Positions 3,479-50,619 of a stretch of DNA of 64,000 nucleotides are shown one piece after another. The stretch is from assembly GCF_000143415.4 (NCBI RefSeq), contig NW_003314303.1, forward strand, positions 1,177,322-1,241,321, given 5' to 3'. A program made the position numbers and the translations under genes. The notes under the pieces are model-generated. The model ran no database searches. It worked only from the letters and a program-made list of their open reading frames with translations, and was not told the origin of the DNA. The stretch's first letter is position 1, and each line of letters begins with the position of its first letter. This DNA is from Selaginella moellendorffii. Its lineage: Eukaryota > Plantae > Lycopodiophyta.

Positions 3479-4006
3479 GATTCGTGTAGCAAGAGTGAGA
3501 ATGCTTGTATTGAAAACTCAGACTTTATACTCAAGAGATCGCTGGGACGGGAATGCAAAGAGTGTTCTACTTTGAAGTTTCACAGCGGAGTTCCTGGACC
3601 ACCAAAAACGACTCTGGGTGATTGACGTGGGATTTTCAACACGACTCATCTCAGTTTTCCTCACGGCTCATCTCAGTTTTCCTCAAGATCAGTTGTCCCG
3701 TTTTCTCGTTCTAGAGGCGTGTTCAAGTTTACGTAGAAAAGAGTTTTGCCGTTCTCTGAGTCACGAGCCATACGAAAGAAAGTCTATCCAATTCTAGACG
3801 ATGAAGAGTTTGGGTGGCGAAGTTTCTTACATCTCCAAGGTGCCACGAGCCCTATGACTATCGAAGTCTATCCAATTGAATACGACGTGAAAGGCTCTTT
3901 TATAATCCATATGACACATATTCATAAGTTCTAGCGTTTAGTTTTTCAACGCTTCTTTCCAGAGAAATACGTACTTATTTGCAAACCCCCTTTTTTATCC
4001 AAATGC

Positions 4007-4496
4007 TTAGCACCTACGATAAGTAAGAGAGATTATAACATCACCAACATAGATTTCGATGTTGATGACACTGGCATCTGGGTTTGCAATTCTTGCAAAT
4101 GCCTGCTGGGAGAGATCAAAGGCACCCGGGCAGCCCGGGCAAAGATCCACGATCTTCACGCGGATAACATTGCTGTTCCTGCAGCCATTGCTCGTGCATT
4201 TCACGCAGTAGTAGTGTCCGCAAGCGGCTCCATTGCTGTAAATAGATGGAGCCGCTGCTGCAAAGCTATAATCTGATGGAAGAGAACCATAGCCATAGCA
4301 AGTTGGTGTTGGTGGATCAGAGAAAAACATTTTTAGGTGTCACTGTGCATGATGAATTCGTGAAAGCTTAAGTTCTTACGCTTGTATTGGTTGTAGAAAG
4401 TGGCTTTGCTTGCGATTCCTAGGCTTGGCTCCGCAAATGCCAAGAGCAGCGTGGTGGCAATGAAGAAAGCAGCAAAGGGGCTTTGGTAGAAGCCAT
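4007..4496 (-). pseudogene. EG45-like type B pseudogene
   Basis: Near-identical to the 10329 and 16066 copies. It has a 2-nt insertion just after the ATG (gcaaaggggctttgg vs gcaaaggctttgg) and a deletion removing the last splice donor. Confidence 0.8.
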
Positions 4497-4987
4497 GGAT
4501 GTGGATAATCGCGAAGTAGTGTTCGATGTTGAAAATAATCGTGAACGGGAAGATAATCGTCATGTGATGAAAGTTAAATTCTGCAATTCAAGGAAAGAGC
4601 TTATTTCAAAGCCCTAAAATTCTTGGCAAACGTTGAATACTTCATAATGAATTGAAAGTACATTGTATTCCAGGAGGGACACTCTAGTCATGGATTTATG
4701 GAACGAGTGTTCAAGAGACTGTTGATGTTGAAGCTTATCGTGAACGAGTGCTTGATGATGAAGATAATCCTCATGTGATTATATTATAGTTGAGGAATGA
4801 AAGTTCAAAACGATATCAAATTCTGGGATGCCAGAATAATTCAAGACTAAAACTTTGAAAGCCGTAAAATTCCATGTAACCTGTAAATTCATCAACACCA
4901 AACTTCAATAATGCGAGCAGAACCATTAGATTAAAAATAAATAAGCTGTAATTAAATGTAGTTATTAACTTTGTACAAAGATTTGTA

Positions 4988-5885
4988 TGTATCTTGGCTC
5001 ACATCGAAGCTCACTTCCACTTTCTTTCCACCACTCTTCTCGACCAAGGCCTTGTAGCTTCCAGTGTGAAACTTCCCTTCCTTGTCTGTGGAACCAGAGA
5101 GCTCCGTCTGCCACAGCCTCTTCCCAGCTTCATTCACAATGGCCATCCTGCCAGAATCCCCACAGCACCACTCCCTCCACTTCTGGATGAGCAAACGCTT
5201 CGCGCAGCACAGCCTCCAAGTCGTCCACTCGGACGTGCTCGTTGCTCGAAGACACGTCCAACAAGCCGCAAAGAATCACCCCCACGGGAATGTAGACATG
5301 GCCTTGGACGCAGATACCACTGACTGGAGCACCTTGTGTTGAGTATATACACTGTCTATGACATGAGCTTAAATAGCAGTAGTGCCACCTCACTGATCCA
5401 GGTGTAGGCTAGAGGTGTGTTTCTTGATCATGTCTATCTTTGTCCATTGTAACTTCTGCGTATCTCGTCATGGTATCAGAGTTGTAAGTTCTTGAGTAGG
5501 AAACAGAGTCCTGTCGTGGATATGAGAGAGTGATTGGATGTAGAGGGGATTCATGTCATTGAGATTAAGAGGGTATATGCTTTCTATGACATGGATCTTG
5601 ATCATGTATATTTAGCTATGACAATATATTCAAGCTACATCATAGCTTCCACATATCTCTTCACCTTGCATGATCGAACTCTCAATTTTCTGGACGTGTT
5701 TCTGAGCTGAGGAGCTCATCTTCAACGTGGTAGTCATTGACGAAGAGCCAGACCGGTAGATCCAGAGCTTGAACATGTTGGCGTGAACCTCGTCACCCAG
5801 CCTGCTCTTGTAGAAATCCCTGTCCTTGTTCACGTTGTAGAACTGAAAGCAGAGCTCTCTGTACCACCTGATCACGTTCTAGAGG
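4988..5885 (-). pseudogene. Duplicated 3' fragment of the GH10 xylanase, interrupted by a TRIM
   Basis: Matches 17265-17960 with deletions (FAHPEVEGVVLWGFWQ, DFYKSRLGDEVHANMFK). Confidence 0.85.
5337..5663 (+). mobile_element. TRIM (terminal-repeat retrotransposon in miniature)
   Basis: Absent from the intact GH10 gene. Flanked by the 5-bp TSD CCTTG, with TG...CA ends. 5' repeat 5337-5470 is followed by PBS TGGTATCAGAG (tRNA-iMet). The 3' repeat is degenerate. Confidence 0.82.
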
Positions 5886-5994
5886 TTGCTCTAAGCCTGT
5901 CACCCTGGGAGCTTTTACGGACTCTTCCAAGATTCGGTCAGACTTTGGAGAACTTTGCCCACTCAGCAGAAGCATCTCCTCTTCTCCTCATAGT

Positions 5995-6217
5995 GTTAGC
6001 AGCATCTCCGACAGTTTTCAACAATCTCAGAGCTTGCAGGACCTTCTTCTGCTTGAGATGCACTGGAAACGGCTGCAGGGATGGGAACATCATCCGGGTG
6101 CAGATCGTGGATGTTTGGCCGTGCTGTCCAGGAGCCTTTGATCTCTCCCAAGAGGCATTTGCACGAATTGCAAACCCAGATGTTGGAGTTATCAGCCTCA
6201 TCTACAACGGATGCTAA
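5995..6217 (+). pseudogene. 5'-truncated EG45-like type A fragment
   Basis: AASPTVFNNLRACRTFFCLRCTGNGCRDGNIIRVQIVDVWPCCPGAFDLSQEAFARIANPDVGVISLIYNGC*. No signal-peptide exon. Confidence 0.8.
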
Positions 6218-7874
6218 ATGTCTCTGATATCCTTCTGATATCTCACTCGCACGTGCTTCCATGATCATACACAATAAAAGGATTTATCAAGAGGATTGGT
6301 GAATCAAAGGATCTCATTCTTGGCTGATCGATTCTAGCTTCCCTTCCCATATATTATTGCGAGAGCTTTGAAATGACCACAAATACGGATGTGGTATGTA
6401 ACACTGTCATAAACATGCATGGCAAAGTCTGGTTGACGGTTTTGACAGTATGCAAATTTCCCTTGTTTTAAACCAATGCTTCTAAAATAATGGTTTTGAA
6501 TTTCATATATTTCTTATGAACTTTTAAATTTTGCAAGAAAGCCTTTTAAATTTCTCAATGTAATTTGCACTTTCCCTTATCATATTGACATCGCTGTGGA
6601 TTGTTGATCAACTTGCTTGACCAGCTGTCTCCTTGTGCCGCATCTTAGGGCTTGACTCTTAATCCAGGCCCGGGCCTCCATGACACTGAGTTGTCACCCT
6701 CAGCAAAGAATGCTCTTAGGGTGATTCTCTATCCAGAATTTCCAAGACGATGGCAATTCCCTTGCCACACCACACACCCAGCCTGAGCATGCAGGGACTT
6801 CCCGTCTGTAGATGTTAGTCCACTAGTGATGAGCAAAGCCAAGGTCCATAACTTTCTGTGATTGTGTGGGATTCAGCAATTAAGAACTCCCTGATTTGAT
6901 GGCCACGCAACAGTGTCCTCTCAAGCGAGGCCAATTGTTTCTCTACAGCTCAACTATGGAGTCACATATGGGAACTCCTTCTGGTACACACACAGCATGT
7001 GACTTTGAGGTACTGTCTATGAAGCCATCATCATCTTACCCATTCAAAACCACTTACAAAGAGCTTTGCAAGCTCATTGAATTATGCCCCTTGAAGTTTT
7101 AATAAGAACTTCAAGAGGAAAGGAAGATCTCCATGCTTTCACGCTCACCTATAGTGTTTGTGATTGTGATGGAATGTCTATTGCCATTGTTCACATAGAT
7201 TGTTAGTCCAAACAATTTGGAGAATGGCAATTCTTAATGCCTACCAGGTTTTCAACCAGATGGAGAAGTGTGTCTAACCTTGCTTCTTAGCCAGACGCTA
7301 TTAGGCTGCTCTAAAATCTGCCACGTGGAACCTCTAACCAGGAGCTTTTATGCAAACTAACATAAAACAACATAAATTAACAGTTGGCCAAAACGAATAT
7401 TTCTACATATGTCATAAGGATTATATGAAAACAAAGATAAGAGTCGTTCACGTCGTTTTCAATTGGATAGACTTCGATAATCTTATGGCCCGTGACGACT
7501 CCAAGTTTTCTAAAGTGAGATATAAGAAAACTTCGCACCCAAACTCTTCATCGTTTAGAATTGGATAGACTTTCATGATAATCGTATTGCTCGTGACTCA
7601 GAAAGCGGCAAACTCTTTTCTACGTAAACTTGAACACGCCTCTAGAACGGAGAAACGAGACAACTGATTTGAGGAAAAACGTGTTGAAAATCCCACGTCA
7701 ATTACCCAGAGTCCTTTTTGGTGGCCCAGGAACTCCGCTGTGAAACTTCAAAGTACAACACTCGTTGCATTCCCGTCCCAGCGAGCTCTTGAGTATAAAG
7801 TCCGAGTTTTCAATACACTCGTCTCAAGCAGCTCCATATCTTCTTCAAACATTCTCGTTCTTGCTACACAAATC

Positions 7875-8336
7875 ATGGCTTCTAGCAAAGGATTTGCTGC
7901 TCTAGTCATTGCCGCCGCGCTTCTCCTGGCACTCGTGGAGCCAAGTGTGGCCCAGGGAATTTCCAGCAGGGCTACGTTCTACACACCTCCATACCAGCGT
8001 AAGATCTTTGCAGTTCTAAACTCTCATTCGTGAAAATCTTCAACTTCTTGTGTTGCTTCTCGTGCAGCGTCCTCTTGCTTTGGGTTTGATCCTCTCCCAG
8101 CAGATTTTCTGTTCGCAGCGGCGTCTCCGGCAGTCTTCAACAATCGCGCAGCTTGTGGGACCTTTTTCTGCGTGAGATGCACTGGAAATGGCTGCAGGAA
8201 TGGCAACACCATCCGAGTGCAGATCGTGGATCTTTGCCCGGGCTGTCCAGGTGCTTTTGATCTCTCCCAAGAGGCATTTGCACGTATTGCAGACCCAGCT
8301 GTTGGAGTTATCAGTGTCAACTACAACGCATGCTAG
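7875..8336 (+). CDS. EG45-like/PNP-like secreted protein, type A
   Basis: ATG 7875, one GT-AG intron, intact frame ending VISVNYNAC* (TAG 8334-8336). Inverted paralog of 3026-3478, including promoter and 3' flank. Confidence 0.88.
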
Positions 8337-8539
8337 ATATCTCTGATATCATGATCAGTAATCATACACAATAATTTATCAAGAGGATTGATGAATCGTT
8401 CTCGATTCTAGCCTTCTTACCCATACACAATCGTGAGAGCTTTGAAATCTTTTCCAAGCTTTAATGGCGTGGTATGTAGTGATCTTACATGGCAAAGTCT
8501 GGGACGTGGAGTTCGAGGCTTCAAGGGAAGAAATACTGA

Positions 8540-9637
8540 AAGATGTCGCACTGAAAGAAGCCACCTTGTGCCATCAAAGGTTGGGAGTCTGTCAAAACAT
8601 TCTCCACGTCAGCCGAAGTCCAAGACCTTGACACAAAAGATCGGGAGCTTCACTGCAAATATGAAGGTGGCAATGCTGGAAGTGATTCCGGAAGAGAAAG
8701 AAGTTGCCTCAGCTGAGTATCAATGTTTGCAAGGTGTTCCTCAAACGTGAAGTGGTAGGTAACTTCAATGTCAGTGCTGTTGCAATGAAAACTTTCCATC
8801 TTGTGCAATGAAAGATCTTCGTTCAACTCAACAGTTTACAGGAAGGACTTGTAGTTGAGGATGCGACGACTTGTGGAGAATCTTGTGCATTCAGATAGTG
8901 GCCATGAGCATTGTAGAGTGTGGCCTTTGAATGTCCATTAGAGATGTCCTTAACAGGCTGTGGCTCGCCCATTAACTTGATTCGACCATTGGCAATTGTC
9001 GGATTGAGTCACGTTCTCTGCGAGAACGTGGTTGACAACTGCCAGGTTCTCCAGAACCTAGTTGCCAGCTGCCAATTCTGGAGAACCCTCTCATCCTCCA
9101 ATAATGTTATTCCACGTGTCCATTAATGGTCTCGCCACAGCCCGTTAAAGCCGTTCCCGGGCACGGCCTTGCTCGTTCCCTCCAGAAGGCGCTTGCCGGG
9201 CTAACGCCCGGCTCGCCTGTTCTGGGCGGGAACGTGCTCGCCCTACCCAGGAACTGCCTCATCTTTCCAAGCTTCCAAATGGTGATGCCATTCACCTTCT
9301 TATGCCATCCGCATTCAAGGATTATGGAATCCTTCAGAGGTGTGGAGCCAAGCTGTTGGTAGTCCACCACCACAAAATCTGCCTATGAAGGGAGGCCAAA
9401 TACTGAAAACCGAACGCCACTGGCAAATGCCTGTGGGAACCATAGTGTGATTAGCAAATGTCTTCAGGATTAAAGTGTGCTTTGAGATGTGAATATGTGA
9501 TGCTTGGGCAGCTTCCATGGAGATGATGTTGCTGCTTTAACCAGAGTCGACGGGAGCGTCAAGGATGGGCAATCCATGGCTGAAGTCCACTAGTGCAAAG
9601 AATGTGCCAGGATCTGGAAAAACAGTTTTGTCAATCA
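8540..9637 (-). mobile_element. Decayed retroelement fragment (aspartic-protease-like)
   Basis: Minus strand reads ...APVDSG*SSNIISMEAAQ...ADFVVVDY...DSIILECGWHKK, resembling the DSG and ILG..WL motifs of retropepsins, with stops and frameshifts. Repeated at 14761-15391. Confidence 0.55.
8949..9259. mobile_element. 311-bp structured insertion (non-autonomous element of unknown class)
   Basis: Present here but absent in the paralogous unit (empty site gatgtc|catctt near 15025). Made of nested inverted repeats. No clear TSD. Confidence 0.7.
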
Positions 9638-9639
9638 GA

Positions 9640-9878
9640 TGTACGAACAGGAAATCTGCTGGAAGAGGAAAGCAAGACGACGCTGCATGAGGAGCAACAC
9701 AAGAAGTTGATCAAGATTTGATTGCGGATGAAAGTTTCTATATAAAGATCTTATGTAGTTATGGAGGTGTGTCGAATGTAGCCCTGCTGGAAATTCCCTG
9801 GGCCACGCTTGGCTCCACGAGTGCCAGGAAAAGCGCGGCGACAATGACTAGAGCAGCAAATCCTTTGCTAGAAGTCAT
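9640..9878 (-). pseudogene. 3'-truncated EG45-like type A
   Basis: MTSSKGFAALVIVAALFLALVEPSVAQGISSRATFDTPP* has a premature stop. Exon 2 is cut off by the retroelement fragment. Confidence 0.8.
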
Positions 9879-10328
9879 GAGCGAGACTGTTTGAAGAAGA
9901 ACTGGGGCTGCTTGAGACGAGTAACTCGAGTGTGCGAGGACTTTATACTCGAGAGACGTGTATTCTACTTTGAAGTTTCACAGCGGGCCACCAAAAACAA
10001 CTCTGAGTAATGGACATGGGATTTCTAACACGACTTATCTCGTATGTCCTCAAGATCAGTTATCTCGTTTCTCCATTCTAGAGTCGTGTTCAAGTTTACG
10101 TAGAAAAGGGTTTTACCGTTCTCTGAGACACGAGCCGTAAGATTATCAAGTAAGTCTGTTCAATTGAAAACGATGAAGTGCTGGGCTCGTCACGAGCCAC
10201 AATATTATCCAATTGAACACGACATGAAATCTTTGTTTTGTATTAAGGCTTATTCATATCATACTAGTGTTTAGTTTTTCAACATTGAAATACGTACTTA
10301 CTTCGGCTTCTCATCACGTCCCAAATGC

Positions 10329-10841
10329 TTAGCACCTATGATAAGTAAGAGAGATTATAACATCACCAACATAGATTTCTTTTATCATTCTTACTGGTAG
10401 TAGTCGATGTTGATGACACCGGCATCTGGGTTTGCAATTCTTGCAAATGCCTGCTGGGAGAGATCAAAGGCACCTGGGCAGCCCGGGCAAAGATCCAGGA
10501 TCTTCACGCGGATAACATTGCTGTTCCTGCAGCCATTGCTCGTGCATTTCACGCAGTAGTAGCGTCCGCAAGCGGCTCCATTGCTGTAAATAGATGGAGC
10601 CGCTGCTGCAAAGCTATAATCTGATGGAAGAGAACCATAGCCATAGCAAGCTGATGCTGGTGGATCAGAGAAAAACATTTTTAGTTGTTATTGTGCATGA
10701 TGAATTCGTGAAAGCTTATTATAAGTTCTTACGCTTGTATTGGTTGTAGAAAGTGGCTTTGCTTGCGATTCCTAGGCTTGGCTCCGCCAAGAGCAGCGTG
10801 GTGGCAATGAAGAAAGCAGCAAAGGCTTTGGTAGAAGCCAT
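10329..10841 (-). CDS. EG45-like/PNP-like secreted protein, type B (3 exons)
   Basis: MASTKAFAAFFIATTLLLAEPSLGIASKATFYNQYK|PSACYGYGSLPSDYSFAAAAPSIYSNGAACGRYYCVKC...AFDLSQQAFARIANPDAGVINIDYYQ|C*. The last exon contributes only G TGC TAA. Confidence 0.85.
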
Positions 10842-12643: not shown

Positions 12644-14135
12644 TGTCTCTGATATCCTTCTGATATCTCACTCGCACGTGTTTCCATGATCATACACAAT
12701 AAACGATCTATCAAGAGGATTGGTAAATCAAAGGATCTCATTTTTGGCTGATCGATTCTAGCTTCCCTTCCCACTTATAATTGCGAGAGCTTTGAAATGA
12801 CCACGAATACGGATGTGGTATGTAACACTGTCATAAACATTTGAGAGTATGCAATTTTCCCTTGTTTTAAACCAATGCTTCTAAAATAATGGTTTTGATT
12901 TTCACATATTTCTTATGAATTTTTAGAAAGCCTTTTAAATTTCTCAATGTAACTTGCACTTGCCCTTATCATATTGACATCGCTGTGGATTGTTGATCGA
13001 CTTGCTTCCAGCTGTCTCCTTGTGCCGCATCTTAGGGCTTGACTCTTAATCCAGGCCCGGGCCTCCATGGCACTGAGTTGTCACCCTCAGCACAGAATGC
13101 TCTTCGGGTGATTCACAGCAGACATCCAGAATTTCCAAGACGATGGCAATTCCCTTGCCACACCACACACCCAGCCTGAGCATGCAGGGACTTCCCGTCT
13201 GTAGATGTTAGTCCACTAGTGATGAGCAAAGCCAAGGTCCATAACTTTCTATGATTGTGTGGGATTCAGATGAAGCCATCATCATCTTACCCATACGAAG
13301 AGCTTTACAAGCTCATTGAATTATGCCCCTTGAAGTTTTAATATCCTTATGAAGTTTAAGAACTTCAAGAGGAAAGGAAGATCTCCATGCTTTCACGCTC
13401 ACCTATAGTGTTTGTGATTGTGATGGAATGTCTACTGCCATTGTTCACATAGATTGTTAGTCCCAAACAACTTGGGGAATGGCAATTCTTAATGCCTACC
13501 AGGTTTTCAACCATGCTTCTTGGATATAATAAGCCAGACGTTATTAGGCTTTTGCAAATATGACAAATTCCATTTATGCAATTTTCACTTAATGGAAAAT
13601 GGGGCTTAAACTTTTACAAACTAACATAAACCAACATAAATTAACAGTTGGCCAAAACGAATACTTCTACAGATGTCATAAGGATTATATGAAAACAAAG
13701 ATAAGAGTCTTTCACGTCGTTTTCAAATGGATAGACTTCGATAATCTTGCCCGTGACAACTCCAAGTTTTCTAGAGTGAGATATACGAAAACTTCGCACC
13801 CAAACTCTTCATCGTTTAGAATTGGATAGACTTTCATGATAATCGTATTGCTCGTGACTCAGAGAGCGGCAAACTCTTTTATACGTAAACTTGAACACGC
13901 CTCTAGAACGGAGAATCGAGACAACTGATTTGAGGAAAAACGTGTTGAAAATCCCACGTCAATTACGCAGAGTCCTTTTTGGTGGCCCAGGAACTCCGCT
14001 GTGAAACTTCAAAGTAGAACAATCGTTGCATTCCCGTCCCAGCGAGCTCTTGAGTATAAAGTCCGAGTTTTCAATACACTCGTCTCAAGCAGCTCCATAT
14101 CTTCTTCAAACATTCTCGTTCTTGCTACACAAATC

Positions 14136-14597
14136 ATGGCTTCTAGCAAAGGATTTGCTGCTCTAGTCATTGCCGCCGTGCTTCTCCTGGCACTCGTGGA
14201 GCCAAGTGTGGCCCAGGGAATTTCCAGCAGGGCTACGTTCTACACACCTCCATACCAGCGTAAGCTTTTTGCAGTTCTAAACTCTCATTCGTGAAAATCT
14301 TCAACTTCTTGTGTTGCTTCTCGTGCAGCGTCCTCTTGCTTTGGGTTTGATCCTCTCCCAGCAGATTTTCTGTTCGCAGCGGCGTCTCCGGCAGTCTTCA
14401 ACAATCGCGCAGCTTGTGGGACCTTTTTCTGCGTGAGATGCACTGGAAATGGCTGCAGGAATGGCAACACTATCCGAGTGCAGATTGTGGATCTTTGCCC
14501 GGGCTGTCCAGGTGCTTTTGATCTCTCCCAAGAGGCATTTGCACGGATTGCAGACCCAGCTGTTGGAGTTATCAGTGTCAACTACAACGCATGCTAA
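14136..14597 (+). CDS. EG45-like/PNP-like secreted protein, type A
   Basis: Near-identical to 7875-8336. Intact frame, stop TAA 14595-14597. Confidence 0.88.
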
Positions 14598-14760
14598 ATA
14601 TCTCTGATATCATGATCAGCAATCATACACAATAATTTATCAAGAGGATTGATGAATCGTTCTCGATTCTAGCCTTCTTACCCATACACAATCGTGAGAG
14701 CTTTGAAATCTTTTCCAAGCTTTAATGGCGTGGTATGTAGTGATCTTGCATGGCAAAGTC

Positions 14761-15391
14761 TTTCTGGAAGAGAAAGAAGTTGCCTCAGCTGAGTGTCAAT
14801 GTTTGCAAGGTGTTCCTCAAACGTGAAGTGGTTGATAACTTCAATGTCAGTGCTGTTGCAATGAAAAGTTTCCATCTTGGGCAATGAAAAATCTTCGTTC
14901 AACTCAACAGTTTATGGGAAGGACTTGTAGTTGAGGATGTGACGACTTGTGAAGAATCTTGTGCATTCAGATAGTGGCCATGGGCATTATAGAGTGTGGC
15001 CTTTGAATGTCCATTGGAGATGTCCATCTTTCCAAGCTTCCAAATGGTGATGCCATTCACCTGCTTATGCCATCCGCATTCAAGGATTATGGAATCCTTC
15101 AAAGGTGTGGAGCCAAGCTGTTGGTAGTCCACCACCACAAAATCTGCCTATGAAAGGATGCCAAATACTGAAAACAGAACGCCACTAGCAAATACCTGTG
15201 GGAACCATAGTGTGATCGGTAAATGTCTTCAGGATTAATGTGTGCTCTAAGATGTGAATATGTGATGCTTGGACAACTTCCATGGAGAGCTTTAACCAGA
15301 GTCGACGGGAGCGTCAAGGATGGGCAATCCATGGCTGAAGTCCACTAGTGCAAAGAATGTGCCAGGATCTGGAAAAACAGTTTTGTCAATC
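14761..15391 (-). mobile_element. Decayed retroelement protease fragment, copy 2
   Basis: Paralog of 8540-9637 without the 311-bp insert. The frame runs KLGKMDISNG across the empty site. Confidence 0.55.
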
Positions 15392-20439: not shown

Positions 20440-22242
20440 CTATGATGACGACACTGTGCTGCTTTGCTCTTGTTCTCGCATAGTGTAGTAAATGTTGGCT
20501 AGCGACACGTACGCTCCAGCCTCTCTCCTGTCAAACTCGAGAACTCGCTCGGCCGCTACCGCAGCCCTCTCCAGATCCCCATGAATCGCGCAGCAACTTA
20601 GCAGGATCCCCCACGCAGTAGCGTCCGCGGAGAACGGCATGCCCTCCACGAGATCCTGCGCGTTTCTCAGCTGTCCTGCCCGTCCCAGGATGTTGACAAT
20701 GCAGCAGTAGTGGAAGAGCGAGTGATCCACGCCGTGATCATGGAGCATCCCTCTGAAGCAGCCGAGTCCTACGCTCAGCGTCCCGACGTGAGTGGACGCC
20801 ACCAAGACGTTCCTCAGCGTTGGCTCGTCCGTGTCCACTCCCTGGAGAAGCATCCGCTGGAAGAACTGGAGAGCTCGTCTTGGATAGCTCCTGCTGCTGC
20901 TACCACTGGCGATGATCCGAGAGTGGGCATTTGCGGCAATGATCGAAGTCCATGACACCGCGCTTGGCTGTGGGAGACGCTCAAACAATGCCTCGGCTTG
21001 AGCCATATACCCGTTGTGGGCATACCCGGACAGCATCGTGTTCCAAGCGACCGTGTCTCTCACCGGCATTTGCTCGAACTGGGCTCTCGATTCCGCCACG
21101 AAGCCGCTGGCTGCGTAAGCGTAGATCATCGCAGTGCTCGCCACAACGTCCACCGAAGGCATTCGATCGAACATCGCCTTGGCTTCTTCCAGTCGCCGGC
21201 TCTCGGCAAGGAGCTGGAGCATCGACGTCCATATAACCACGCTTCCCTCTGGGATCTCGTCGAAGAACACCTTGGCTTCCTGGATTCGTTCCCGGCTGTG
21301 AGCGTAGGCCTGGAACAGCGCGGCCCACGAGAGAGAGTTGTGCTTGGGCATCTCGTCCAAGAACTTCTTGGCCTCTTCCACATCCCCGAGCTGGGCATAC
21401 GCGGAGATCATCGAGTTCCACGAAGAACAGTCGCGCTCGATCATGGCGTCGAAGATCTTCTTCGCGCCAGCCACGTCTTCGACCTCTGCGTGAGCGGCTA
21501 TCAGGGCGTTGCACGACACGATGCTGAATTCCGGCATGGATTGGATGATCTCCCGGAATTTCTCGTGATCCCCTATCTGGGCATATGCTAGAACCATCGT
21601 TGTCCACGAAACGATGTCCCTCTGGCTCATACTGTCGAAGATCTTTCTTGCTTCATCGATCCGCAAATGCGAGCTATAGCTCGAGATCATGATGTTCCAC
21701 GACTTGACGTTCCACTCGGGCATCCTTTGGAACAACTGCTTCGTTCCACCCATATCCCCATTCTCGGCATTTGCTGTGAGCACGGCATTCCAGCAAGCCA
21801 AATCCCTCTGAGGCATCGTCTCGAAGAGATCACGCACAGAATCCATCTCGCCACTGTCGGCATAGGCGCTTATCATCGTAGTCCACGACACAATGTCCCT
21901 GAGATCAGCCATTCTCTCAAAAATCGCCCGGGCATCCTGGATCCTCCCGGCAAGCACATAGCTCTGGAGCATCACGTTCCAGGAGAAGACGTTGGGCTCC
22001 GGGATGGCCTCAAACACCCTCCGCGCATCATCCACGCTCCCACACTGCCCATACATTTGCACCACGACATTGGCCAGGAATCGGCTCCTGGCAAAGGCGC
22101 CGCTCGCGATCTTGGCATGGATTTCCCTCACCTCCTCAGCAGTGTCGCAAGATCGCACCAGTCTTGCGAGATCTTCCTTGAGGACCTGCTGCTGCTGCTG
22201 CCGGCGATCCAACCCGGCGACGCTGCAGCGCGATCTAAGCAT
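20440..22242 (-). CDS. PLS-class pentatricopeptide repeat protein with E domain, no DYW
   Basis: Intronless 600-aa ORF with many 31-aa repeats (VSWTTMI.AY...G....A..IFD.M). Ends HYCCIVNILGRAG...WGILLSCCAIHGD...AYVSLANIY. Confidence 0.93.
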   Translation of the reverse strand: MLRSRCSVAGLDRRQQQQQVLKEDLARLVRSCDTAEEVREIHAKIASGAFARSRFLANVVVQMYGQCGSVDDARRVFEAIPEPNVFSWNVMLQSYVLAGRIQDARAIFERMADLRDIVSWTTMISAYADSGEMDSVRDLFETMPQRDLACWNAVLTANAENGDMGGTKQLFQRMPEWNVKSWNIMISSYSSHLRIDEARKIFDSMSQRDIVSWTTMVLAYAQIGDHEKFREIIQSMPEFSIVSCNALIAAHAEVEDVAGAKKIFDAMIERDCSSWNSMISAYAQLGDVEEAKKFLDEMPKHNSLSWAALFQAYAHSRERIQEAKVFFDEIPEGSVVIWTSMLQLLAESRRLEEAKAMFDRMPSVDVVASTAMIYAYAASGFVAESRAQFEQMPVRDTVAWNTMLSGYAHNGYMAQAEALFERLPQPSAVSWTSIIAANAHSRIIASGSSSRSYPRRALQFFQRMLLQGVDTDEPTLRNVLVASTHVGTLSVGLGCFRGMLHDHGVDHSLFHYCCIVNILGRAGQLRNAQDLVEGMPFSADATAWGILLSCCAIHGDLERAAVAAERVLEFDRREAGAYVSLANIYYTMREQEQSSTVSSS

Positions 22243-22625
22243 CTATGTCCCGAAATATCCAGTGCTAGCTCGAAATTTCCCAGCGAAGATCTTTCACCGC
22301 GGCCATGCGATGCTGCTGCCGGCGATCCAATGCCGCGATGCTGTGGCGCAATCTAAGCATCTGTGCCCCCTGCCGATCGACATATCCAGTGCTAGCTCGA
22401 AATTTCCCAGCTTAGATCTGTCATCGCGGCCGCAAGCATCTAGAGCTCTTCCGACGATCGATCCTACCCCCTGGAACTTCTAGAATCGCGAAGATTTCCA
22501 GCGAAGATCTTTCATGCGATGCTGCTGCCGGCGATCCAATGCCGCGACGCTGCCCCTGCCGATCGAAATATCCGGTGCTAGCTAGAAGTTTCCCCTTTCA
22601 TCGCGGCCGAAAGATCTTTCCATCC
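22194..22625. repeat. Degenerate tandem repeat (about 3 units of 115-200 bp) over the PPR start
   Basis: TGCTGCTGCCGGCGATCCAA at about 22194, 22311 and 22520, each followed by ATATCC(A/G)GTGCTAGCT and GAAGATCTTTCA-type blocks. Confidence 0.7.
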
Positions 22626-22786
22626 CAATGCAAGCATCTCGAACGATCGATGGCGGAGCTCTAGGAAGAAGCGCTCTCTAGAGAGAGCCCTGGAACTTTT
22701 TTACTTCTATCTACCTGGGTCTACCTAGGGTTCAAGAAGAATGAAGAACAAGGTGGAGGAGAGGAGGAGCCCTTGTTTGTGAGGAA

Positions 22787-22981: not shown

Positions 22982-23139
22982 GTGATCGATCGCGCCGGAT
23001 CGATCGAGGTAACACAGTAGGTTCTCGTAGTAGTGGACAAAAGGGAAAGAGAGAAAGGGAAATTTCCTAGGGAGGAGGTGGCGAGCGAGCGAGCGATCGA
23101 TCGATCGATCGATCGATCAATGACTGCTAATTCATCGCG

Positions 23140-34244: not shown

Positions 34245-35342
34245 TCAGTGGACAGTTTGCCATGCTCCATTTATACATCGCAGTCGAATCTTTTTTGGCT
34301 CGATCATTATAGTTTTTAAATGCTCTTCTTCCCGCTTTCTTTTCACACACCATTTCCCGGGCTCTGACTGCTGGAAAATCAATTTCAAACTCATTTTCCC
34401 TGCCTTTGTTTGATCCTGGAGCTTTTCCATTGTCAATTCGTGTTGTGGACTGGGCAAATTCCTCACCACCCAAGGATGCTTCTTCACTTTCCGCAAGGAC
34501 AGCCTCTTCTCAGGGTTGATGTTGAGCAAATGCAGAATGAGTTTTTTAGCTTCGTCGCTTATGCCTATCCAATCGAGAGAGCTTATTGGCAAATCCTCCA
34601 AACATCCTAATCTCTTCTCAATTTCCTGCGATGCCAACCTTGGAAATGCACACTTTCCAGACAACATCTCATAAAGAACAATCCCCACACTCCACACATC
34701 AACCCTCTCGTCATAAACATGGCCAGGAGATGACATCTCAGGAGCTCTGTACCTCTCTGTCCCAACCATCCCCCTCATGATCATACCTGGTGGTGACCCC
34801 TTCTTTGAAAACCTTGACGATGTTCCAAAGTCTGCCAACTTTACATTCCCAAATAAGCTTTCCCCAAACCCAAGAAGGATGTTCCCAGGCTTGATGTCCC
34901 TGTGAGTGACACCCCTCCTGTGCATCTTGTGGACTGCCTTGGCCACTTGCTTGATCACAATTGCAGCTTCGTGCTCACTAAGCCTCTTTTTTCTAAGTAG
35001 TACATCTCTTAGTGAACACTGACATAGCTCCATGACGAGATGATAGTAATCCTCATCCCTAAAAACCTCCACAAGCTCAGGTACCATTGCTCCACCACTC
35101 GGACTATGCATCTTTGAGAGATGCACCAGTGCCTCAATCTCTGCCTCGGCTTCTTCTCGTAAGCCTCCATCTGGGAGCATGTCATCGGTGATCGAGTCCT
35201 CAATTGTATAATCACTCACTCGGATTGTTTTACATGCGAAAAACTTGCCATCTACCTTGCGCTTCATCTTGTATACGATTGCTTGGCCACCACGACCGAG
35301 CTCTTCCTCCAGAGTATAAAAGTTCTCTATATCACTCCCCAT
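34245..35342 (-). CDS. Intronless Ser/Thr protein kinase (CAMK/CDPK-PPCK-like, no EF hands)
   Basis: LGRGGQAIV, FACK, HRDIKPGN, LADFG, GTERYRAPE, DVWSVG. Open from ATG 35342. Confidence 0.8.
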   Translation of the reverse strand: MGSDIENFYTLEEELGRGGQAIVYKMKRKVDGKFFACKTIRVSDYTIEDSITDDMLPDGGLREEAEAEIEALVHLSKMHSPSGGAMVPELVEVFRDEDYYHLVMELCQCSLRDVLLRKKRLSEHEAAIVIKQVAKAVHKMHRRGVTHRDIKPGNILLGFGESLFGNVKLADFGTSSRFSKKGSPPGMIMRGMVGTERYRAPEMSSPGHVYDERVDVWSVGIVLYEMLSGKCAFPRLASQEIEKRLGCLEDLPISSLDWIGISDEAKKLILHLLNINPEKRLSLRKVKKHPWVVRNLPSPQHELTMEKLQDQTKAGKMSLKLIFQQSEPGKWCVKRKREEEHLKTIMIEPKKIRLRCINGAWQTVH

Positions 35343-35561
35343 TCTCGCTGCTCTCTGTCCTCTCCTAACAATATACCCTAACAAAAGGATTCCGTAGTAA
35401 AGGCAAATATATTTCTGCGTTATTCTGAGGAAAAATGCTTTAAAAATTAAAAAAATGTATTTCTAGACAGTAAAAGAGAAAACAAGCAAGAAAAGAAAAG
35501 ATACCAGTGCCACCTCCCCAAGATGGAGGAGGCATTCCAAGAACAGCCGGCCCTTCGGCCC

Positions 35562-36045
35562 ACCCGGCCCTTCGTTGGTAATCAGCTCCAGCGTCCTGGC
35601 CAGCTCCTCGTTGCGAAGAACATCACCAGCTTTCGCCAGCTTCCCATTCGGCGAGAGGAACTTTCGAAGCGTTCTGTGAGCTAGAATCCCCTTGAGACTC
35701 TGAGCAATTTCAAATTCCAGGTAAGGTGTTACCACGAATCCATCCCGGGCTAGCTTGATGGCCGGCTCCAAGAGCGATTTCCAGGGCAGCCTTCCAAAGT
35801 GTTGCCACGCGAGGTGGAGTCCAGCGAGCTCGCCAGGAACTCCAGCGGACGAAGCACCATCGACTTTAGAGGATGGCTTCTTTGCGTACATGTCCTGGAA
35901 AAAAAGAGAGGAGTTCTCCGTGGATGGAATGTAATGTAATGAAAGAAAGAAAAAAATTCCAAGTACCTTGGATGCCGCGGCCGGGGCGATCTCGCGCATG
36001 TCATAGGCGATGGCGGAGCCATTGGCGAGTTGCAGGAGCAAGAAC
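35562..36045 (-). pseudogene. Gamma-glutamyl transpeptidase internal fragment
   Basis: AYDMREIAPAAAS, GVPGELAGL, FGRLPWKSLLEPAIKLARDGF, LARTLELI. One intron. Confidence 0.85.
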
Positions 36046-37421
36046 CTCGCAAACAGCCAAACCGGTTGGAGATGAACTGTGACCCTCTGGTAGTTAATGC
36101 ATTGGCAACGCGAAAAAGTGGACGTTCTAGTGGCAAGCCGAGCCGAGAATGCAATGCTCTCCGGAGGTCAACTACAATAACAACACACACTTTGACAGCG
36201 AGTCAAGCAAGTAATAAAAGCTCACCAGAGTCGCGTTCAAGCTGGTTCTTATCGAAGATGGCTGTTACAGGATGCACGCTAGCGGGAACTTTGAAATGAT
36301 ATGGGCGCAACTACGTCGTCCGTGTAAGTAAGCATGGCTCTCTACTCTACTCACGAGTCATACCTGAAGACTGGTATTCCTTGCCGACAAAGCTTTACCA
36401 ATGGATTTCCAGTTGAATCGTCAGAGCACGAGTGATTGTGTTCATCGCTTTGTGCAAGGCGGAGTTCCTGGAAACTAAGCATAGCACGTCCAGGGAAACC
36501 GTGGCTATGTGTAGCAAGGTTCCGTCTGCAGCTATGTAAGGAGAATGAGAAGCGGATAAACAAACCGGCACCACTTACAAGGAGTGTAATGAGATCAGTC
36601 TGCTTGCTTTGCTGCGTCAAAAGCTTGCCAACCGGAGGATGTGCTATCTGGAAAGCAAACTCATCAGAGTTCTTACAAACTTGTGTTTGAGAGCTTACCA
36701 AAGAGTCGAAAAGAGCTGAATCTGGGAACACAGATTGTAGCTCTTCGTTAGCTTGAGAGCGAACGAGAAATCTTCTCGACGATCCTTCCATAATACATAC
36801 AGTGCTTGAGCTCGTGAAACTCTGGGGAAGGTCTCTAATTTTCCCATCCAGCTGCTTCTTAAGATCTAATGTCACACAGTTAGAAAAGTATAAGAGAAAA
36901 AAAGTACCTGAGGAAGTTCCAGAAGATGTGTAGAGCGAGAGGCCAAGCTCGACTTTGACATGAAGAAGCGTGAAACTCTGGGGAAGGTCTCTAATTTTCC
37001 CATCCAGCTGCTTCTTAAGATCTAATGTCACACAGTTAGAAAAGTATAAGAGAAAAAAAGTACCTGAGGAAGTTCCAGAAGATGTGTAGAGCGAAAGGCC
37101 AAGCTCGACTTGACAATGAAGAAGCGCTGTGGATTCCCAAAACTCTTTCGCGGAAAAGGAAGATTGCTCGATCGGTTGTAGGGCCTGAGAGAAGAACGTA
37201 ATGCCATCGCTGGAGCTGGATCGAGTAGCATCATCGTTCGATGAGACCAGAGGCTTTTCCTGGCCACAGCACACGCCTTTGCAGCATCCGATCCAACCAG
37301 CAATGCTCCAATCACTTCCAGCCCCCGGGAAGAAGGATCCGCAATTCACCTGGAATCTCGGATCACGAAATCTCTGTGCCTAGAGCCCTACCTTCCTCAG
37401 CGGCGTAATCTGGATCGCCAT
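36046..37421 (-). pseudogene. UFSP: Ufm1-specific protease 5' part, with an internal 156-bp tandem duplication
   Basis: GLEVIGALLVG, FWESTALLHCQ, HPVTAIF, LHSRLGLPLERPLFRVANAL match the plant UFSP N-terminal region. Confidence 0.75.
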
Positions 37422-37658
37422 CCTTGTAGCGCAGGCAGCGGATCGAGGAAGCGATCGTCCGGGACTCCAATCAGCCACGCCACGCCGGCATTCTCTTGTC
37501 TGTGCTTGGCGAGATCGCACAGCACCCTAAGTTGACTTGCTGACTACCATCATTGACTGACAAGAACTTTGCTTAATTCTTGGGAGTTTTCGCAAATCCT
37601 CCTAGTAATATAGCTGAAACAACACTACTTTCACGCGATTCTTTGCAATTACAACTAT

Positions 37659-38650
37659 CTACGAAACGTTCATAGTTCTCATCGCTTGGATCTCTTGCCT
37701 CTCCTTCCACAGCCCGAGACTTCCATAGATGTTCGCCATAAGAGCGTAGGCCGAGTCTAATCTCCTGTCCAGAGCAATCAAACGCTGAAACGCCAATCTC
37801 TTGTGACACCCTGCGAGCACGGTCGTCCAAGTTACCAGCATCGCCTCAAATGGCATCCTCGCCACCATAGCCACCGCTTCCTCGAGTCTGTTACTTCTGC
37901 TGAGAAGATCCACCACGCAGTGGTAGTGATGGATCCCGGGAGCCAGCCCAAACTTTGAGCTCATCTCTTCGAAGTAACGCTTGCCAAGATCGACCAAGCC
38001 GGCGTGGCTGCAAGCCGAGAGAAGCGAGGAGAAGATCATCACGTCTGGACGAAGGTCTTTGTCTAGCAGCGCCTGGAAGAACTCCAGAACTCGTGGAGTG
38101 TCTCCCTGCCTGCTATATCCTGCGACCAAGGCCGTCCAGGCCACCATATCCTCCTGCGAGCTTAGCTGGAATGCCTCGAGAGCTTCATCCACGCTTCCAC
38201 ACCTTCCATAGAAATCGACCAGCGTCGCGGCGATGGAGGCCTCTCTTTCCAGTCCAGCGTCCCGGATTTGCTCGTGGATCTCTTGGCTGGTTTCCAGCGC
38301 CGCCAAGTTCCCGCACGCCTTGAGAGCCGCCACGAAAGTCCAGGCATCGAGAGGACACCGCTTCTCTTCCATCATGCGCCGGAAGAGCTCGAGAGCGAGC
38401 TCGTCTTGGCTGTTGTCGACGCAGCCAAAGATCATGGACGTCCACGAGATGACGTTGTGATCTTGCATGGAGTCGAAAACTCTTTGTGCGTCGGCGATGT
38501 TTCCATACTTTCGCGATCTAGCGAAAATGCCACACCTGGAGTACATGCTCACCAGGCTAGATCCCACGAACAGGTCAGAATCGAGGCCGCATTCCACCGC
38601 CGTCGCGTGGATCCTCTTGCCCCGCGCTAGATCCTTGCGCTTGGCGCCAT
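37659..38650 (-). pseudogene. 5'-truncated PLS-E PPR gene
   Basis: PPR motifs, LSACSHAGLVD, HYHCVVDLL. E-domain deletion relative to the right-arm copy. Confidence 0.8.
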
Positions 38651-47877: not shown

Positions 47878-48051
47878 TGTGCGTGCATGGAATATGGAAA
47901 GGGAATACAGAAATGTGCATATCAATTAACCCAAAAACCCTAGCTTATATACAGGAGCGAGTGGTCCGGATTGAAACCAATCCGACGGCTACCAAAATCC
48001 ACTACGCTAATATTAGTATACGGCTACGATGCCGTACACTTGGCCCTCACA
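47878..48051 (-). repeat. 3' LTR
   Basis: Appears identical to 52712-52885. Confidence 0.95.
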
Positions 48052-48083
48052 TCATCCCCTCCTCTCGGAATAATGGAAGGCCG

Positions 48084-50615
48084 TCAGGGTTCTCTTGTAG
48101 ATGGGCCGGGATCTAGAGGAACGTTAGGAGGAGGCATCGGTGGATCTATAGACGGTATTAACTGCTCCTGATCCCTCTGTATGAAGCGTTTTAACCGCTG
48201 CACATGCACAATCTCCGGAGGATCAGCCTGCTGAACGTCATGCCGAACCTCATAAACTTGTGGTCCAACTTGCCGCAACACCCGATACGGTCCTTTCCAC
48301 TGCGCAAGGAGCCCCTTAGATAAACCATGTACCGTAAGATGGGGAAAACGGACTAACACCAAATCATCCACTTTGTACTCCGCTGGTGGATGATGATGGG
48401 AATTGTAGCGCCATTGTTGTCCCACTTGTACGCGGCCTAAGTGTTCAGCAGACTCTGCTCGGACAAGTGGAAGAATGCTTGTCAAATATTGATCCCATGA
48501 CCTAGCATCAGGAGCTCGTGGCAATCGCGAAGGTAAACCTAGCTCTGTTGGTAATATTGGATCATGACCATATAGAAGTTTATATGGTGAAGCACCAACA
48601 GAACTCTGCACCCCTGTGACATAAGCATACCGAAGAGACGGCAAATAACCATCCCAATCCGAATGTTGAAAGTTCACATACTTCGCAATCATCCCTTTGA
48701 ATGTTCGAACGAGCCGTTCCACCAGACCGTCTGATTGTGGATGATAAGCACTCGTAAAAGTGTGGCGTATCCCCAACCGAGATGTCAAAACATGAAATAC
48801 CTCAGCCATAAATGCAGGACCATTATCCGAAAGAATCTGTTCTGGACAAGAATGCTGGAACACCACTCGATTGAGGAGGAAGTATCCAACAGCAGTTGCA
48901 GAGGCACTAGCAAGAGCACCAACTTCCACCCAACGAGTCAAGTAGTCAGAAGCAATAATAACATACTCATTGCCAGCAGTCGATCGCGGAAAAGGTCCCA
49001 TAAGATCAAACGCCACCAACTCAAACGGACGAGAAACTGCAATTGACTCCAACCGTCCTTCTGCAGCACAAGGGGGAGTATTACGAGCTTGGCACCAAAC
49101 GCAGCTACGCACATACCGGATAATATCACGTCGCATCTCTGGCCAATAGAAAGATCTGCGCAACTTCTCGGTGACACGACGGTGTCCCATATGCCCACCT
49201 AGAATAGGAGAATCATGGTAAGCATGGAGAAACCGCGGAATAAACACCGAAGGCACCACCAGCCGTAAATGAGCATCAGGATCCGTCCCCACAAAATAAA
49301 GAAGGCCATCTTCAAGGCGATATTGAGAATGTAAATGCCGAAAAGGCAAGTCATCAGCAAGTGATGCAGGATTCTCAAACCCATCTCGAAGCCTTCGAAT
49401 CCACGGCTCAATCTTTTGAGCCTCGCGAACCTCATCCAGAGAAGGTAGATCTTGCTCTACGCCCTGTGGACACTGAACGTCAAGGACAGCAACCGCCGAC
49501 GGCACAGAATCCTCATCTAGAAAATCCACAGATGCTGGAACAACAGGTTCGTCAAAAACATGAGAAGTGAGTGGAGAAGGAAGAGGAGCTCGAGAAAGGG
49601 CATCAGCATCAGCCATAGAACTCCCTGGGCGATGAACAACATTGAAATCATATATCTGAAGCTTCAAAGCCCATCGAGCCGTACGACCAACCAGGTTCTT
49701 CCGCTTCAATAATGAAGTAACAGCAGCATGGTCACCTTCAAGTAACGTCCGAGAACCATGTAGATAGGCATGAAGTTTCTCGAAACCCCAGACTGCTGCT
49801 AAACACTCCTTCTCCGTCGTGGAGTAGTTCATCTCCGCTGGTTGTAATGTACGGCTTATGTATGCAATGGGATGGCGCTGACCAGGCACACTCGAGCTCT
49901 CTTGCATCAACACACCTCCAAGACCAATGTCAGAAGCATCCACGCGCAAAATAAAAGGTCGAGTGTAGTCAGGATATGCCAAAACCGGAGGAGTCGTCAA
50001 TAGCTCTTTGAGATTCACGAACGCCCGCTCACAATCGGGAGACCAGATGAAAGATGACGTTGATGACTTCAGCAACGCTCGCAATGGTACAGTGCGATCG
50101 GAAAGATGATCCACAAAACGACCGAGATACTGCACCTTACCCAAAAAACGCTGCACATCATTCACACACTTCGGAGTAGGGAACTTTAGAACAGCCACAA
50201 GTTTGTCAGGATCAACTTGCAAACCCTCACGAGAAATACGGTACCCAAGATAAGTTGTGTCCTTGGACCCAAACACGCACTTCGACCGCTTCAGCTTTAA
50301 ACCAACGTCGTGTAGCCGATCCAACACTTTACAAACATCATGAACATGCTCCTCCCATGTCCCCTCCGAGTGGATCAAGACATCATCAATGAAGTCAGCC
50401 GTCACCTCCGGCATATCGCAAAGAACCTCATCCATCATTCGCTGAAAAGTTGCTGGAGCATTGTTCAAACCAAACGGCATCACCAAAAACTCGTACAAAC
50501 CAAATGGTGTACGAAAAGCAGTCTTAGGAATATCGTCTTCAGCCATCGGTACTTGCCAATACCCAGAAGCAAGATCTAGCTTGGTGAACCAACGACTTCG
50601 CCCCAGACGATCCAA
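48084..50615 (-). CDS. pol: Pol: RT, RNase H, integrase
   Basis: KLDLASGYWQ, MPFGLNNAPATFQ, FIDD, DASDIGLG, NYSTTEKE, H..H..C..C, SDNGPAF, HPQSDGLVER, WKGPY. No chromodomain. Confidence 0.93.
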   Translation of the reverse strand: MDRLGRSRWFTKLDLASGYWQVPMAEDDIPKTAFRTPFGLYEFLVMPFGLNNAPATFQRMMDEVLCDMPEVTADFIDDVLIHSEGTWEEHVHDVCKVLDRLHDVGLKLKRSKCVFGSKDTTYLGYRISREGLQVDPDKLVAVLKFPTPKCVNDVQRFLGKVQYLGRFVDHLSDRTVPLRALLKSSTSSFIWSPDCERAFVNLKELLTTPPVLAYPDYTRPFILRVDASDIGLGGVLMQESSSVPGQRHPIAYISRTLQPAEMNYSTTEKECLAAVWGFEKLHAYLHGSRTLLEGDHAAVTSLLKRKNLVGRTARWALKLQIYDFNVVHRPGSSMADADALSRAPLPSPLTSHVFDEPVVPASVDFLDEDSVPSAVAVLDVQCPQGVEQDLPSLDEVREAQKIEPWIRRLRDGFENPASLADDLPFRHLHSQYRLEDGLLYFVGTDPDAHLRLVVPSVFIPRFLHAYHDSPILGGHMGHRRVTEKLRRSFYWPEMRRDIIRYVRSCVWCQARNTPPCAAEGRLESIAVSRPFELVAFDLMGPFPRSTAGNEYVIIASDYLTRWVEVGALASASATAVGYFLLNRVVFQHSCPEQILSDNGPAFMAEVFHVLTSRLGIRHTFTSAYHPQSDGLVERLVRTFKGMIAKYVNFQHSDWDGYLPSLRYAYVTGVQSSVGASPYKLLYGHDPILPTELGLPSRLPRAPDARSWDQYLTSILPLVRAESAEHLGRVQVGQQWRYNSHHHPPAEYKVDDLVLVRFPHLTVHGLSKGLLAQWKGPYRVLRQVGPQVYEVRHDVQQADPPEIVHVQRLKRFIQRDQEQLIPSIDPPMPPPNVPLDPGPSTREP

Positions 50616-50619
50616 GAGA

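What the first reader, a model, noticed from the sequence alone, without database searches (positions are those of the whole stretch)
8949..9259. 311-bp TSD-less insertion folded almost entirely into two fold-back domains
Seen: the sister unit has an empty site (gatgtc|catctt near 15025) with a continuous reading frame, so this is most simply an insertion, with only 1 nt of boundary ambiguity. Domain 1 (8950-9148) is closed by TTAACAGGCTGTGGC / GCCACAGCCCGTTAA. It encloses two hairpins: GGCAATTGTC..CACGTTCTC/GAGAACGTG..GACAACTGCC and GGTTCTCCAGAA/TTCTGGAGAACC. Domain 2 (about 9150-9258) is a GC-rich rod: GCCGTTCCCGGG/CCCAGGAACTGC, CGTTCCC/GGGAACG, CCAGAA/TTCTGG, GCCGGGC-TAAC-GCCCGGC. Inference: asymmetric structured ends without TIRs or TSD do not fit an ordinary MITE. 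They suggest a non-autonomous element moving as ssDNA (HUH-type; Replitrons are reported in non-seed plants) or a mobile structured RNA. An alternative is a TTAA-flanked MITE (domain 1) joined to a second element.
Basis: partly seen in the sequence, partly recalled or inferred. Interest (0 to 1): 0.8.

Follow-up and report, generated by a model that had tools for sequence, protein, structure and literature searches.

The report
Small hairpin-rich transposon-like insertion in spikemoss
A 311-base, strongly self-folding piece of DNA sits between two genes in one copy of a tandem repeat of the spikemoss Selaginella moellendorffii; its layout best fits a gene-less passenger of the known rolling-circle (Helitron2/Helentron) transposons, but it lacks their usual T-T target and I could not check whether other copies exist.

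Summary
Window 8950-9260 (or 8949-9259; one C is ambiguous) is 311 bp. It is present in repeat unit A and absent, without target-site duplication, from sister unit B (15025) and from B's allele on the other haplotype (L003). It is the most stable 311-nt stretch in the window (z -8 to -11; 68% paired).

The genome is Selaginella moellendorffii, scaffold GL377607.1. The site lies between EG45-like genes, not in a gene.

Best reading (about 0.4): a non-autonomous Helitron2/Helentron-type (HLE2, HINE-like) rolling-circle element.
- A 15-nt inverted repeat sits at the 5' end.
- Its partner (9134-9148) is internal and is followed by a 3' stem-loop tail.
- There are short central repeats and no duplication.
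- This kind is published for this species (Helitron-5_SMo).
- Against it: the target is C^C or C^A, not T^T, and the 3' tail is long (111 nt).

Rivals are a TTAA-flanked MITE beside a second hairpin, captured DNA or a deletion in B, and a new HUH element.

I found no second copy in about 160 kb of this genome, and the tools cannot search the whole genome. Copy number, partner element and polarity are therefore untested.

The scan had already noted small Helentron-like insertions elsewhere in this genome (s1-380662, s1-385211). I could not compare them.

The parts
8950..9260 (+). Whole 311-bp extra segment (equally 8949-9259; one C ambiguous). No target-site duplication.
   Evidence: empty in unit B (15025) and in the allelic haplotype L003 at about 12634
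8950..8975 (+). Left inverted-repeat arm. The core is 8950-8964 (15 nt, 14/15 complementary to 9134-9148). The arm is itself a weak palindrome, TTAA-N18-TTAA.
   Evidence: (I1)
9123..9148 (+). Right inverted-repeat arm. It is internal, 111-112 nt from the 3' end, and is also self-palindromic.
   Evidence: (I1)
8991..9043 (+). Internal hairpin a. Its tip is a 21-nt palindrome at 9010-9030 (9-nt arms, 3-nt centre).
   Evidence: (I9)
9045..9087 (+). Internal hairpin b, with a 12/12 stem.
   Evidence: I5
9023..9074 (+). Two copies of a direct repeat about 30 nt apart (22 nt, 82%). These are the central short repeats.
   Evidence: D2
9150..9257 (+). 3' tail: an imperfect 108-nt rod, 69% GC. The arms are 72% alike and the mismatches are mostly transversions.
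9195..9212 (+). Perfect 7-bp GC stem with a TAAC loop at the tip of the rod.
   Evidence: (I2)
15025..15025 (.). Empty site in sister unit B.

Best explanation
The 311 bp is most likely one non-autonomous transposable element of the Helitron2/Helentron (HLE2) rolling-circle type, comparable to the HINE/DINE-1 elements of animals.

Anatomy, shown:
- The 5' end starts (0-1 nt in) with a 15-nt inverted repeat.
- Its partner lies inside the element at 9134-9148.
- Everything 3' of that partner is a stem-loop tail.
- The interior carries small hairpins and short repeats.

Mechanism, inferred from what is known for Helitrons, not shown here: a RepHel (HUH nuclease plus helicase) enzyme encoded by a full-length partner elsewhere in the genome would recognise these ends. 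It would nick one strand, move the element as single-stranded DNA and join it into the target without duplicating host bases.

The element either entered unit A after the A/B duplication or was lost cleanly from unit B. The window cannot say which.
For: - There is no TSD, and the indel boundaries coincide to within 0-2 nt with the outermost base pairs of the compound structure.
- The layout matches the published HLE2 definition. ATIRs are 8-15 bp, the 5' one lies 0-2 bp from the end, and the 3' one lies upstream of a hairpin (PMC3627910). TIRs of 12-16 nt with a stem-loop after the right repeat (PMC11417382). Palindromic subTIRs, central repeats and no target modification (PMC4067079). Here.
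- The first base is T if the ambiguous C is given to the host on the left, as preferred by Helitron2 (PMC3627910).
- Helitron2 is published for this species (Helitron-5_SMo, PMC3627910), whereas cut-and-paste MITEs are very rare in it (73 elements, one family; PMC3964958).
- The rod's arms differ by 28%, mostly by transversions, while the A/B flanks differ by 6-7%. The imperfect hairpin therefore came ready-made from a source element and is not a fresh snap-back.
- The insert has no similarity to its own flanks.
- GTTC/GAAC half-sites occur 10 times against 2.3 expected and are shared by both domains. CTCGCC occurs 4 times on one strand across both domains. This fits one unit or one family.
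Against: - The target is C^C or C^A, not after a T or between T and T as in all HLE2 families I read about (PMC11417382, PMC4067079, PMC5148889).
- The 3' tail is 111 nt, against 20-60 nt in described families.
- The 5' hairpin that should involve the 5' repeat is weak (-1.6 kcal/mol, z +0.6).
- I found no second copy in about 160 kb of this genome (window, L003, L009-L012).
- I compared no partner element.
- TTAA lies on both sides of domain 1, as a TTAA-specific cut-and-paste element would leave it.
Confidence: 0.4

Rival explanations
1. Two elements. A 199-bp TTAA-specific cut-and-paste MITE (8950-9148, or its core 8954-9144 between two TTAA) inserted into a TTAA at the left edge of an earlier 116-bp hairpin insertion (domain 2).
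For: - 26-nt terminal inverted repeats (85%) are flanked by TTAA on both sides.
- Unchecked scan notes report TTAA-targeting Sola1-like transposons with their own 22-24-bp palindromes and MITEs in this genome.
- Domain 1 holds a 21-nt palindrome, and domain 2 holds an 83%-similar copy (D3).
Against: - It needs two hits at one spot.
- The first insert (domain 2 plus TTAA) would still be TSD-less and unexplained, and the empty site has no TTAA.
- TTAA is its own reverse complement and also ends the inner side of both arms (8972, 9123). It may therefore simply be part of the repeat.
- MITEs are very scarce in this species (PMC3964958).
- There is no other copy in about 160 kb.
Confidence: 0.25
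2. Not a transposition. Either a fragment of some palindrome-rich repeat was captured during double-strand-break repair in unit A, or the segment was ancestral and was deleted from unit B by end joining at 1-nt microhomology.
For: - A TSD-less junction with 1 nt of overlap is typical of end joining.
- Only two independent copies of the site exist, A and B. B' on the other haplotype is B's allele, so no outgroup fixes the polarity.
- Units A and B differ by other indels as well.
Against: - The boundaries coincide with the ends of the compound structure, which a random deletion or capture would not do.
- The left boundary is exactly the start of an inverted repeat.
- There is no similarity to local sequence that could serve as a template.
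- The hairpin is too imperfect to be a fresh snap-back.
Confidence: 0.2
3. A non-autonomous member of an undescribed or little-known TSD-less transposon group (Replitron-like, IS200/IS605-like, Crypton-derived) with a non-T target, or an integrated mobile structured RNA.
For: - Ends are asymmetric, there is no TSD, and the target is not T^T.
- The fold is extreme on both strands.
- Replitrons reach high copy numbers in non-seed plants, including a Selaginella species (PMC10288648).
Against: - There are no short direct terminal repeats; only a 4-nt CAGG lies near both ends.
- No Rfam family matches at E<=10, there is no hammerhead and no tRNA-like part.
- There is no poly(A).
- Nothing here requires a new mechanism.
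Confidence: 0.1

Closest known systems
Non-autonomous Helitron2/Helentron elements (HLE2; HINE/DINE-1 type), including Helitron-5_SMo of S. moellendorffii (PMC3627910, PMC4067079, PMC11417382)
   Same: - A short inverted repeat at the 5' end, with its partner subterminal and followed by a 3' stem-loop.
- Palindromic repeat arms.
- Short central repeats.
- No target-site duplication.
- A few hundred bp long with no coding capacity.
- The host species is known to carry this group.
   Different: - The target is C^C or C^A rather than T^T or after T.
- The 3' tail is 111 nt rather than 20-60 nt and forms a long rod rather than a 5-10-bp palindrome.
- The 5' hairpin is weak.
- Family membership (shared ends with a RepHel element, multiple copies) is untested.
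TTAA-specific cut-and-paste MITEs (piggyBac-, Kolobok- or Sola-type)
   Same: Domain 1 alone has terminal inverted repeats bounded by TTAA on both sides and is about 200 bp long.
   Different: - The empty site has no TTAA.
- The whole insert has no TTAA at its right end.
- 111 extra structured bases are attached.
Replitron-N1 and other non-autonomous Replitrons (PMC10288648)
   Same: HUH-type, small and non-coding. A palindrome lies near one end. The group is reported in lycophytes.
   Different: Replitrons carry short direct repeats at both termini and no inverted pair. Here it is the reverse.
Canonical Helitron1 non-autonomous elements
   Same: No TSD, and a GC-rich 3' hairpin.
   Different: There is no 5' TC, no 3' CTRR at the end and no A^T target.

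Membership tests
Helitron2/Helentron (HLE2) non-autonomous element | Short (8-16 nt) inverted repeat whose 5' copy lies 0-4 nt from the 5' end | tested here: met
   15-nt core at 8950-8964, 14/15 complementary to 9134-9148, lying 0-1 nt from the boundary
Helitron2/Helentron (HLE2) non-autonomous element | 3' copy of the repeat is subterminal and followed by a stem-loop that runs to the 3' end | tested here: met
   The right arm ends at 9148. Positions 9150-9257 fold into a rod with a perfect 7-bp tip (z -5.0). The tail is 111 nt, longer than the 20-60 nt described.
Helitron2/Helentron (HLE2) non-autonomous element | No target-site duplication | tested here: met
   Exact flank comparison with the empty site shows 1 ambiguous nt only
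Helitron2/Helentron (HLE2) non-autonomous element | Insertion after T, or between T and T | tested here: not met
   The host bases at the junction are C^C or C^A (G^G or T^G on the other strand). The papers describe this as a strong preference.
Helitron2/Helentron (HLE2) non-autonomous element | 5' hairpin involving the 5' repeat | tested here: inconclusive
   The left arm is a weak palindrome (7/9 arms), -1.6 kcal/mol, z +0.6
Helitron2/Helentron (HLE2) non-autonomous element | Multiple copies sharing both ends with a RepHel-encoding partner | not testable with these tools
   No tool searches this plant genome. There is no second copy in about 160 kb held. The metagenome scan gave only chance hits.
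TTAA-specific cut-and-paste MITE (domain 1 only) | Terminal inverted repeats flanked by a duplicated TTAA, with an empty site holding one TTAA | tested here: inconclusive
   TIRs and TTAA on both sides are present. But TTAA is self-complementary and recurs inside the arms. The only empty site available lacks the whole 311 bp and has no TTAA.
Replitron (non-autonomous) | Short direct repeats at or near both termini | tested here: not met
   Only a 4-nt CAGG is shared near the two ends. Criterion from PMC10288648.
Canonical Helitron1 | 5' TC, 3' hairpin plus CTRR, A^T target | tested here: not met
   Neither strand has these ends or this target
Known structured RNA (Rfam), including hammerhead retrozymes, SINE/tRNA-derived and miRNA families | Match to a covariance model or a tRNA-like part | tested here: not met
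   There is no match inside the element better than 10 bits at E<=10. ARAGORN finds nothing.

The most novel reading that the evidence does not exclude
The 311 bp is one mobile unit of a TSD-less transposon lineage that uses an HLE2-like end layout but a different, non-T target. The reiterated GTTCYS-N-SRGAAC palindromes in both domains would be its protein-binding sites. That would make it a divergent or undescribed HUH-type (or other) system in lycophytes.
Probability: 0.1. Interest if true: 0.6.

Novelty: new member of a known kind. Interest (0 to 1): 0.3.

Why it matters
If it is an HLE2 passenger, it is one more small rolling-circle element in a lycophyte. Land-plant Helitron2/Helentron elements were long thought absent and have been surveyed only since 2024, so a clean insertion with an empty site helps to define their ends and targets in plants. 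The non-T target is the one feature that could point to something less ordinary. For the host, the insert is intergenic, inside a variable EG45-like gene array. No effect on a gene is evident.

Tried and rejected
- Other copies in the window: none (blastn, word size 7).
- Rfam at E<=10 and ARAGORN: nothing.
- Pfam on the ORFs in and around the insert: nothing.
- Word-index protein search with the ORF that crosses domain 2: no hit. Exact look-ups of window ORFs: not on record. My first PPR look-up used a wrongly trimmed minus-strand range.
- Metagenome scan with a 22-nt repeat pattern: five hits, all the pattern alone, at about chance level.
- Sampling of four further S. moellendorffii loci (87 kb): no copy.
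- Spliceosomal intron: rejected, with no GT/GC...AG on either strand at the only two possible boundaries.
- Local duplication: MAFFT aligned the insert's first 55 nt to the right flank, but local alignments are no better than shuffles.
- Fresh snap-back palindrome: rejected on arm divergence.
- Supplements: those of the HELIANO paper are not held. Those of PMC3627910 hold only a protein alignment, no termini of Helitron-5_SMo.
- Not run: the exhaustive protein-representative search. It is costly and a poor proxy for non-coding DNA.

Full report
WHAT IS THERE

Unit A of a tandem array with a period of about 6.3 kb carries 311 bp that unit B lacks. The left flank matches exactly up to A 8949 = B 15025, and the right flank matches from A 9260 = B 15025. 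The extra DNA is therefore 8950-9260 or 8949-9259, with one ambiguous C and no duplicated host bases. The flanks are 93-94% identical between the units.

The segment folds far better than shuffles: DNA z -7.9, RNA + strand z -9.3, RNA - strand z -11.2. It folds better than any of 205 other 311-nt windows of the 64 kb, and 68% of its bases are paired.

WHERE IT IS

An EG45-like exon next to the site matched annotated proteins of Selaginella moellendorffii (accessions). Their genes lie on scaffold GL377607.1 of GCA_000143415.2, which is the window in reverse. The annotation places the site between two EG45-like genes.

A cluster member led to the allelic scaffold GL377653.1 (L003). That haplotype lacks a whole unit (window about 3971-10330, which holds the insert). 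Its single copy of the site is empty and 98.5% identical to unit B. Only two independent states of the site exist, A filled and B empty, and no outgroup is available. Insertion into A and clean loss from B cannot be told apart here.

WHAT IT IS NOT

- A spliceosomal intron: there are no GT/GC...AG ends at either possible boundary.
- A known RNA: Rfam at E<=10 and ARAGORN find nothing.
- Coding: no Pfam match.
- A copy of neighbouring sequence: local alignments to 500 bp on each side, both strands, score no better than shuffles. An apparent match made by MAFFT is an artefact.
- A fresh snap-back palindrome made during repair: the arms of domain 2 are only 72% alike and 9 of 13 mismatches are transversions, while the flanks of A and B differ by 6-7%.

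ANATOMY

- Left arm, 8950-8975. It pairs with 9123-9148 (26 nt, 85%). The outer 15 nt pair 14/15. Each arm is itself a weak palindrome bounded by TTAA on both sides.
- Interior. Between the arms lie two hairpins. One has a 21-nt palindrome at its tip, the other a 12/12 stem. There is also a 22-nt direct repeat spaced 30 nt apart.
- 3' tail. After the right arm come 111 nt at 69% GC. They fold into one imperfect rod with a perfect 7-bp GC tip.
- Shared motifs. GTTC/GAAC half-sites occur ten times against 2.3 expected, five in each domain. Two 18-nt palindromic segments, one per domain, are 83% alike. CTCGCC occurs four times on one strand across both domains. By my rough estimate the 18-nt similarity has a chance probability of about 0.01-0.02. 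This hints that the two domains belong together, or at least to one family.

BEST READING

The layout is an inverted repeat at the 5' end, its partner internal, then a stem-loop to the 3' end, with no duplication. This is the published definition of Helitron2/Helentron (HLE2) elements and their non-autonomous HINE/DINE-1 derivatives (PMC3627910, PMC4067079, PMC11417382). PMC3627910 names Helitron-5_SMo of this species as an example.

Scan notes reported many Helentron copies and two small Helentron-like insertions with empty sites in this genome. Those notes led me to this comparison. I did not check them.

Cut-and-paste MITEs are very rare in this species: 73 elements in one family (PMC3964958).

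I therefore prefer a single HLE2-type passenger moved as single-stranded DNA by a RepHel enzyme encoded elsewhere. The mechanism is inferred from the family, not shown here.

WHAT SPEAKS AGAINST IT

- The host junction is C^C or C^A. The HLE2 families I read about insert after T (T^T; TTTT^T/C; TNAT^A).
- The tail is about twice the usual length.
- The 5' hairpin is weak.
- No second copy turned up in the window, the allelic locus or four further loci of the genome, about 160 kb in all. That only bounds the family at a few thousand copies or fewer.

For these reasons I say it works like an HLE2 element but do not claim family membership. The novelty class 'new member of a known kind' rests on either of the two leading readings being right.

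RIVALS

- A TTAA-specific MITE (domain 1) sitting in a TTAA at the edge of an earlier hairpin insert remains possible. The scan's unchecked notes of TTAA-targeting Sola1-like elements with private palindromes fit the palindromes seen here. But this needs two events at one spot and leaves the first insert unexplained. TTAA may also simply be part of the repeat.
- Capture of foreign DNA at a break, or deletion from B, fits the 1-nt overlap. It does not fit the coincidence of the boundaries with the structure.
- A Replitron is not supported, because direct terminal repeats are absent (PMC10288648).
- A truly new TSD-less lineage with a non-T target is the most novel reading left. I give it about 0.1.

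LIMITS

None of the DNA collections here holds this plant.
- The metagenome scan gave chance hits only.
- The protein index holds no ORF from the insert.
- The exhaustive protein search was not run, because it is a poor and costly proxy for non-coding DNA.
- One BLASTN against the public assembly would settle most of the open points.

Noticed in passing
window 3971-10330 versus L003: The other haplotype (GL377653.1) lacks one whole 6.36-kb unit of the EG45-like array, the unit that carries the insert. The array therefore differs in copy number between the two haplotypes.
   Followed up: partly
L003 10693-11767 (target at window about 15889): Haplotype 2 has a 1.07-kb insertion with long terminal direct repeats and a 5-bp duplication (GTAAG) that the window lacks. 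It looks like a polymorphic TRIM-type retroelement.
   Followed up: partly
window 8501-8680: A second indel of about 180 bp lies between units A and B, 270 bp left of the insert. Its boundaries are ambiguous (a repeated CTGGAAG) and it has no obvious transposon features.
   Followed up: no
window 7400-8500 versus 13650-14760: Units A and B are about 99% identical over this EG45-like gene stretch but only 93-94% identical around the insert site. This suggests a gene-conversion tract that stops near 8500.
   Followed up: partly
window 22440-22664: A 225-bp stretch is bounded by 24-nt inverted repeats (79%) that start with CTAGAGCTCT. It may be a MITE of the AGCTCT-ended family that scan notes mention. 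A (GATC)n run lies nearby at 23082-23121.
   Followed up: no
window 34245-38597 (-) and 55549-59487 (+): The same gene set (PPR-E, an unknown ORF, a gamma-glutamyltranspeptidase fragment, a protein kinase) occurs twice in inverted orientation, about 17 kb apart. A Ty3/gypsy element lies between the two copies.
   Followed up: no
window 47878-52885: A Ty3/gypsy retrotransposon has gag, protease, RT-RNase H and integrase ORFs. The 174-nt terminal repeat segments are 100% identical, so it is probably a young insertion.
   Followed up: no
window 20443-22242 (-): This 600-aa PPR-E gene is listed in the public annotation of the locus. It is absent from the protein collection by exact look-up, and its best hits there are only 25-34% identical.
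   Followed up: partly
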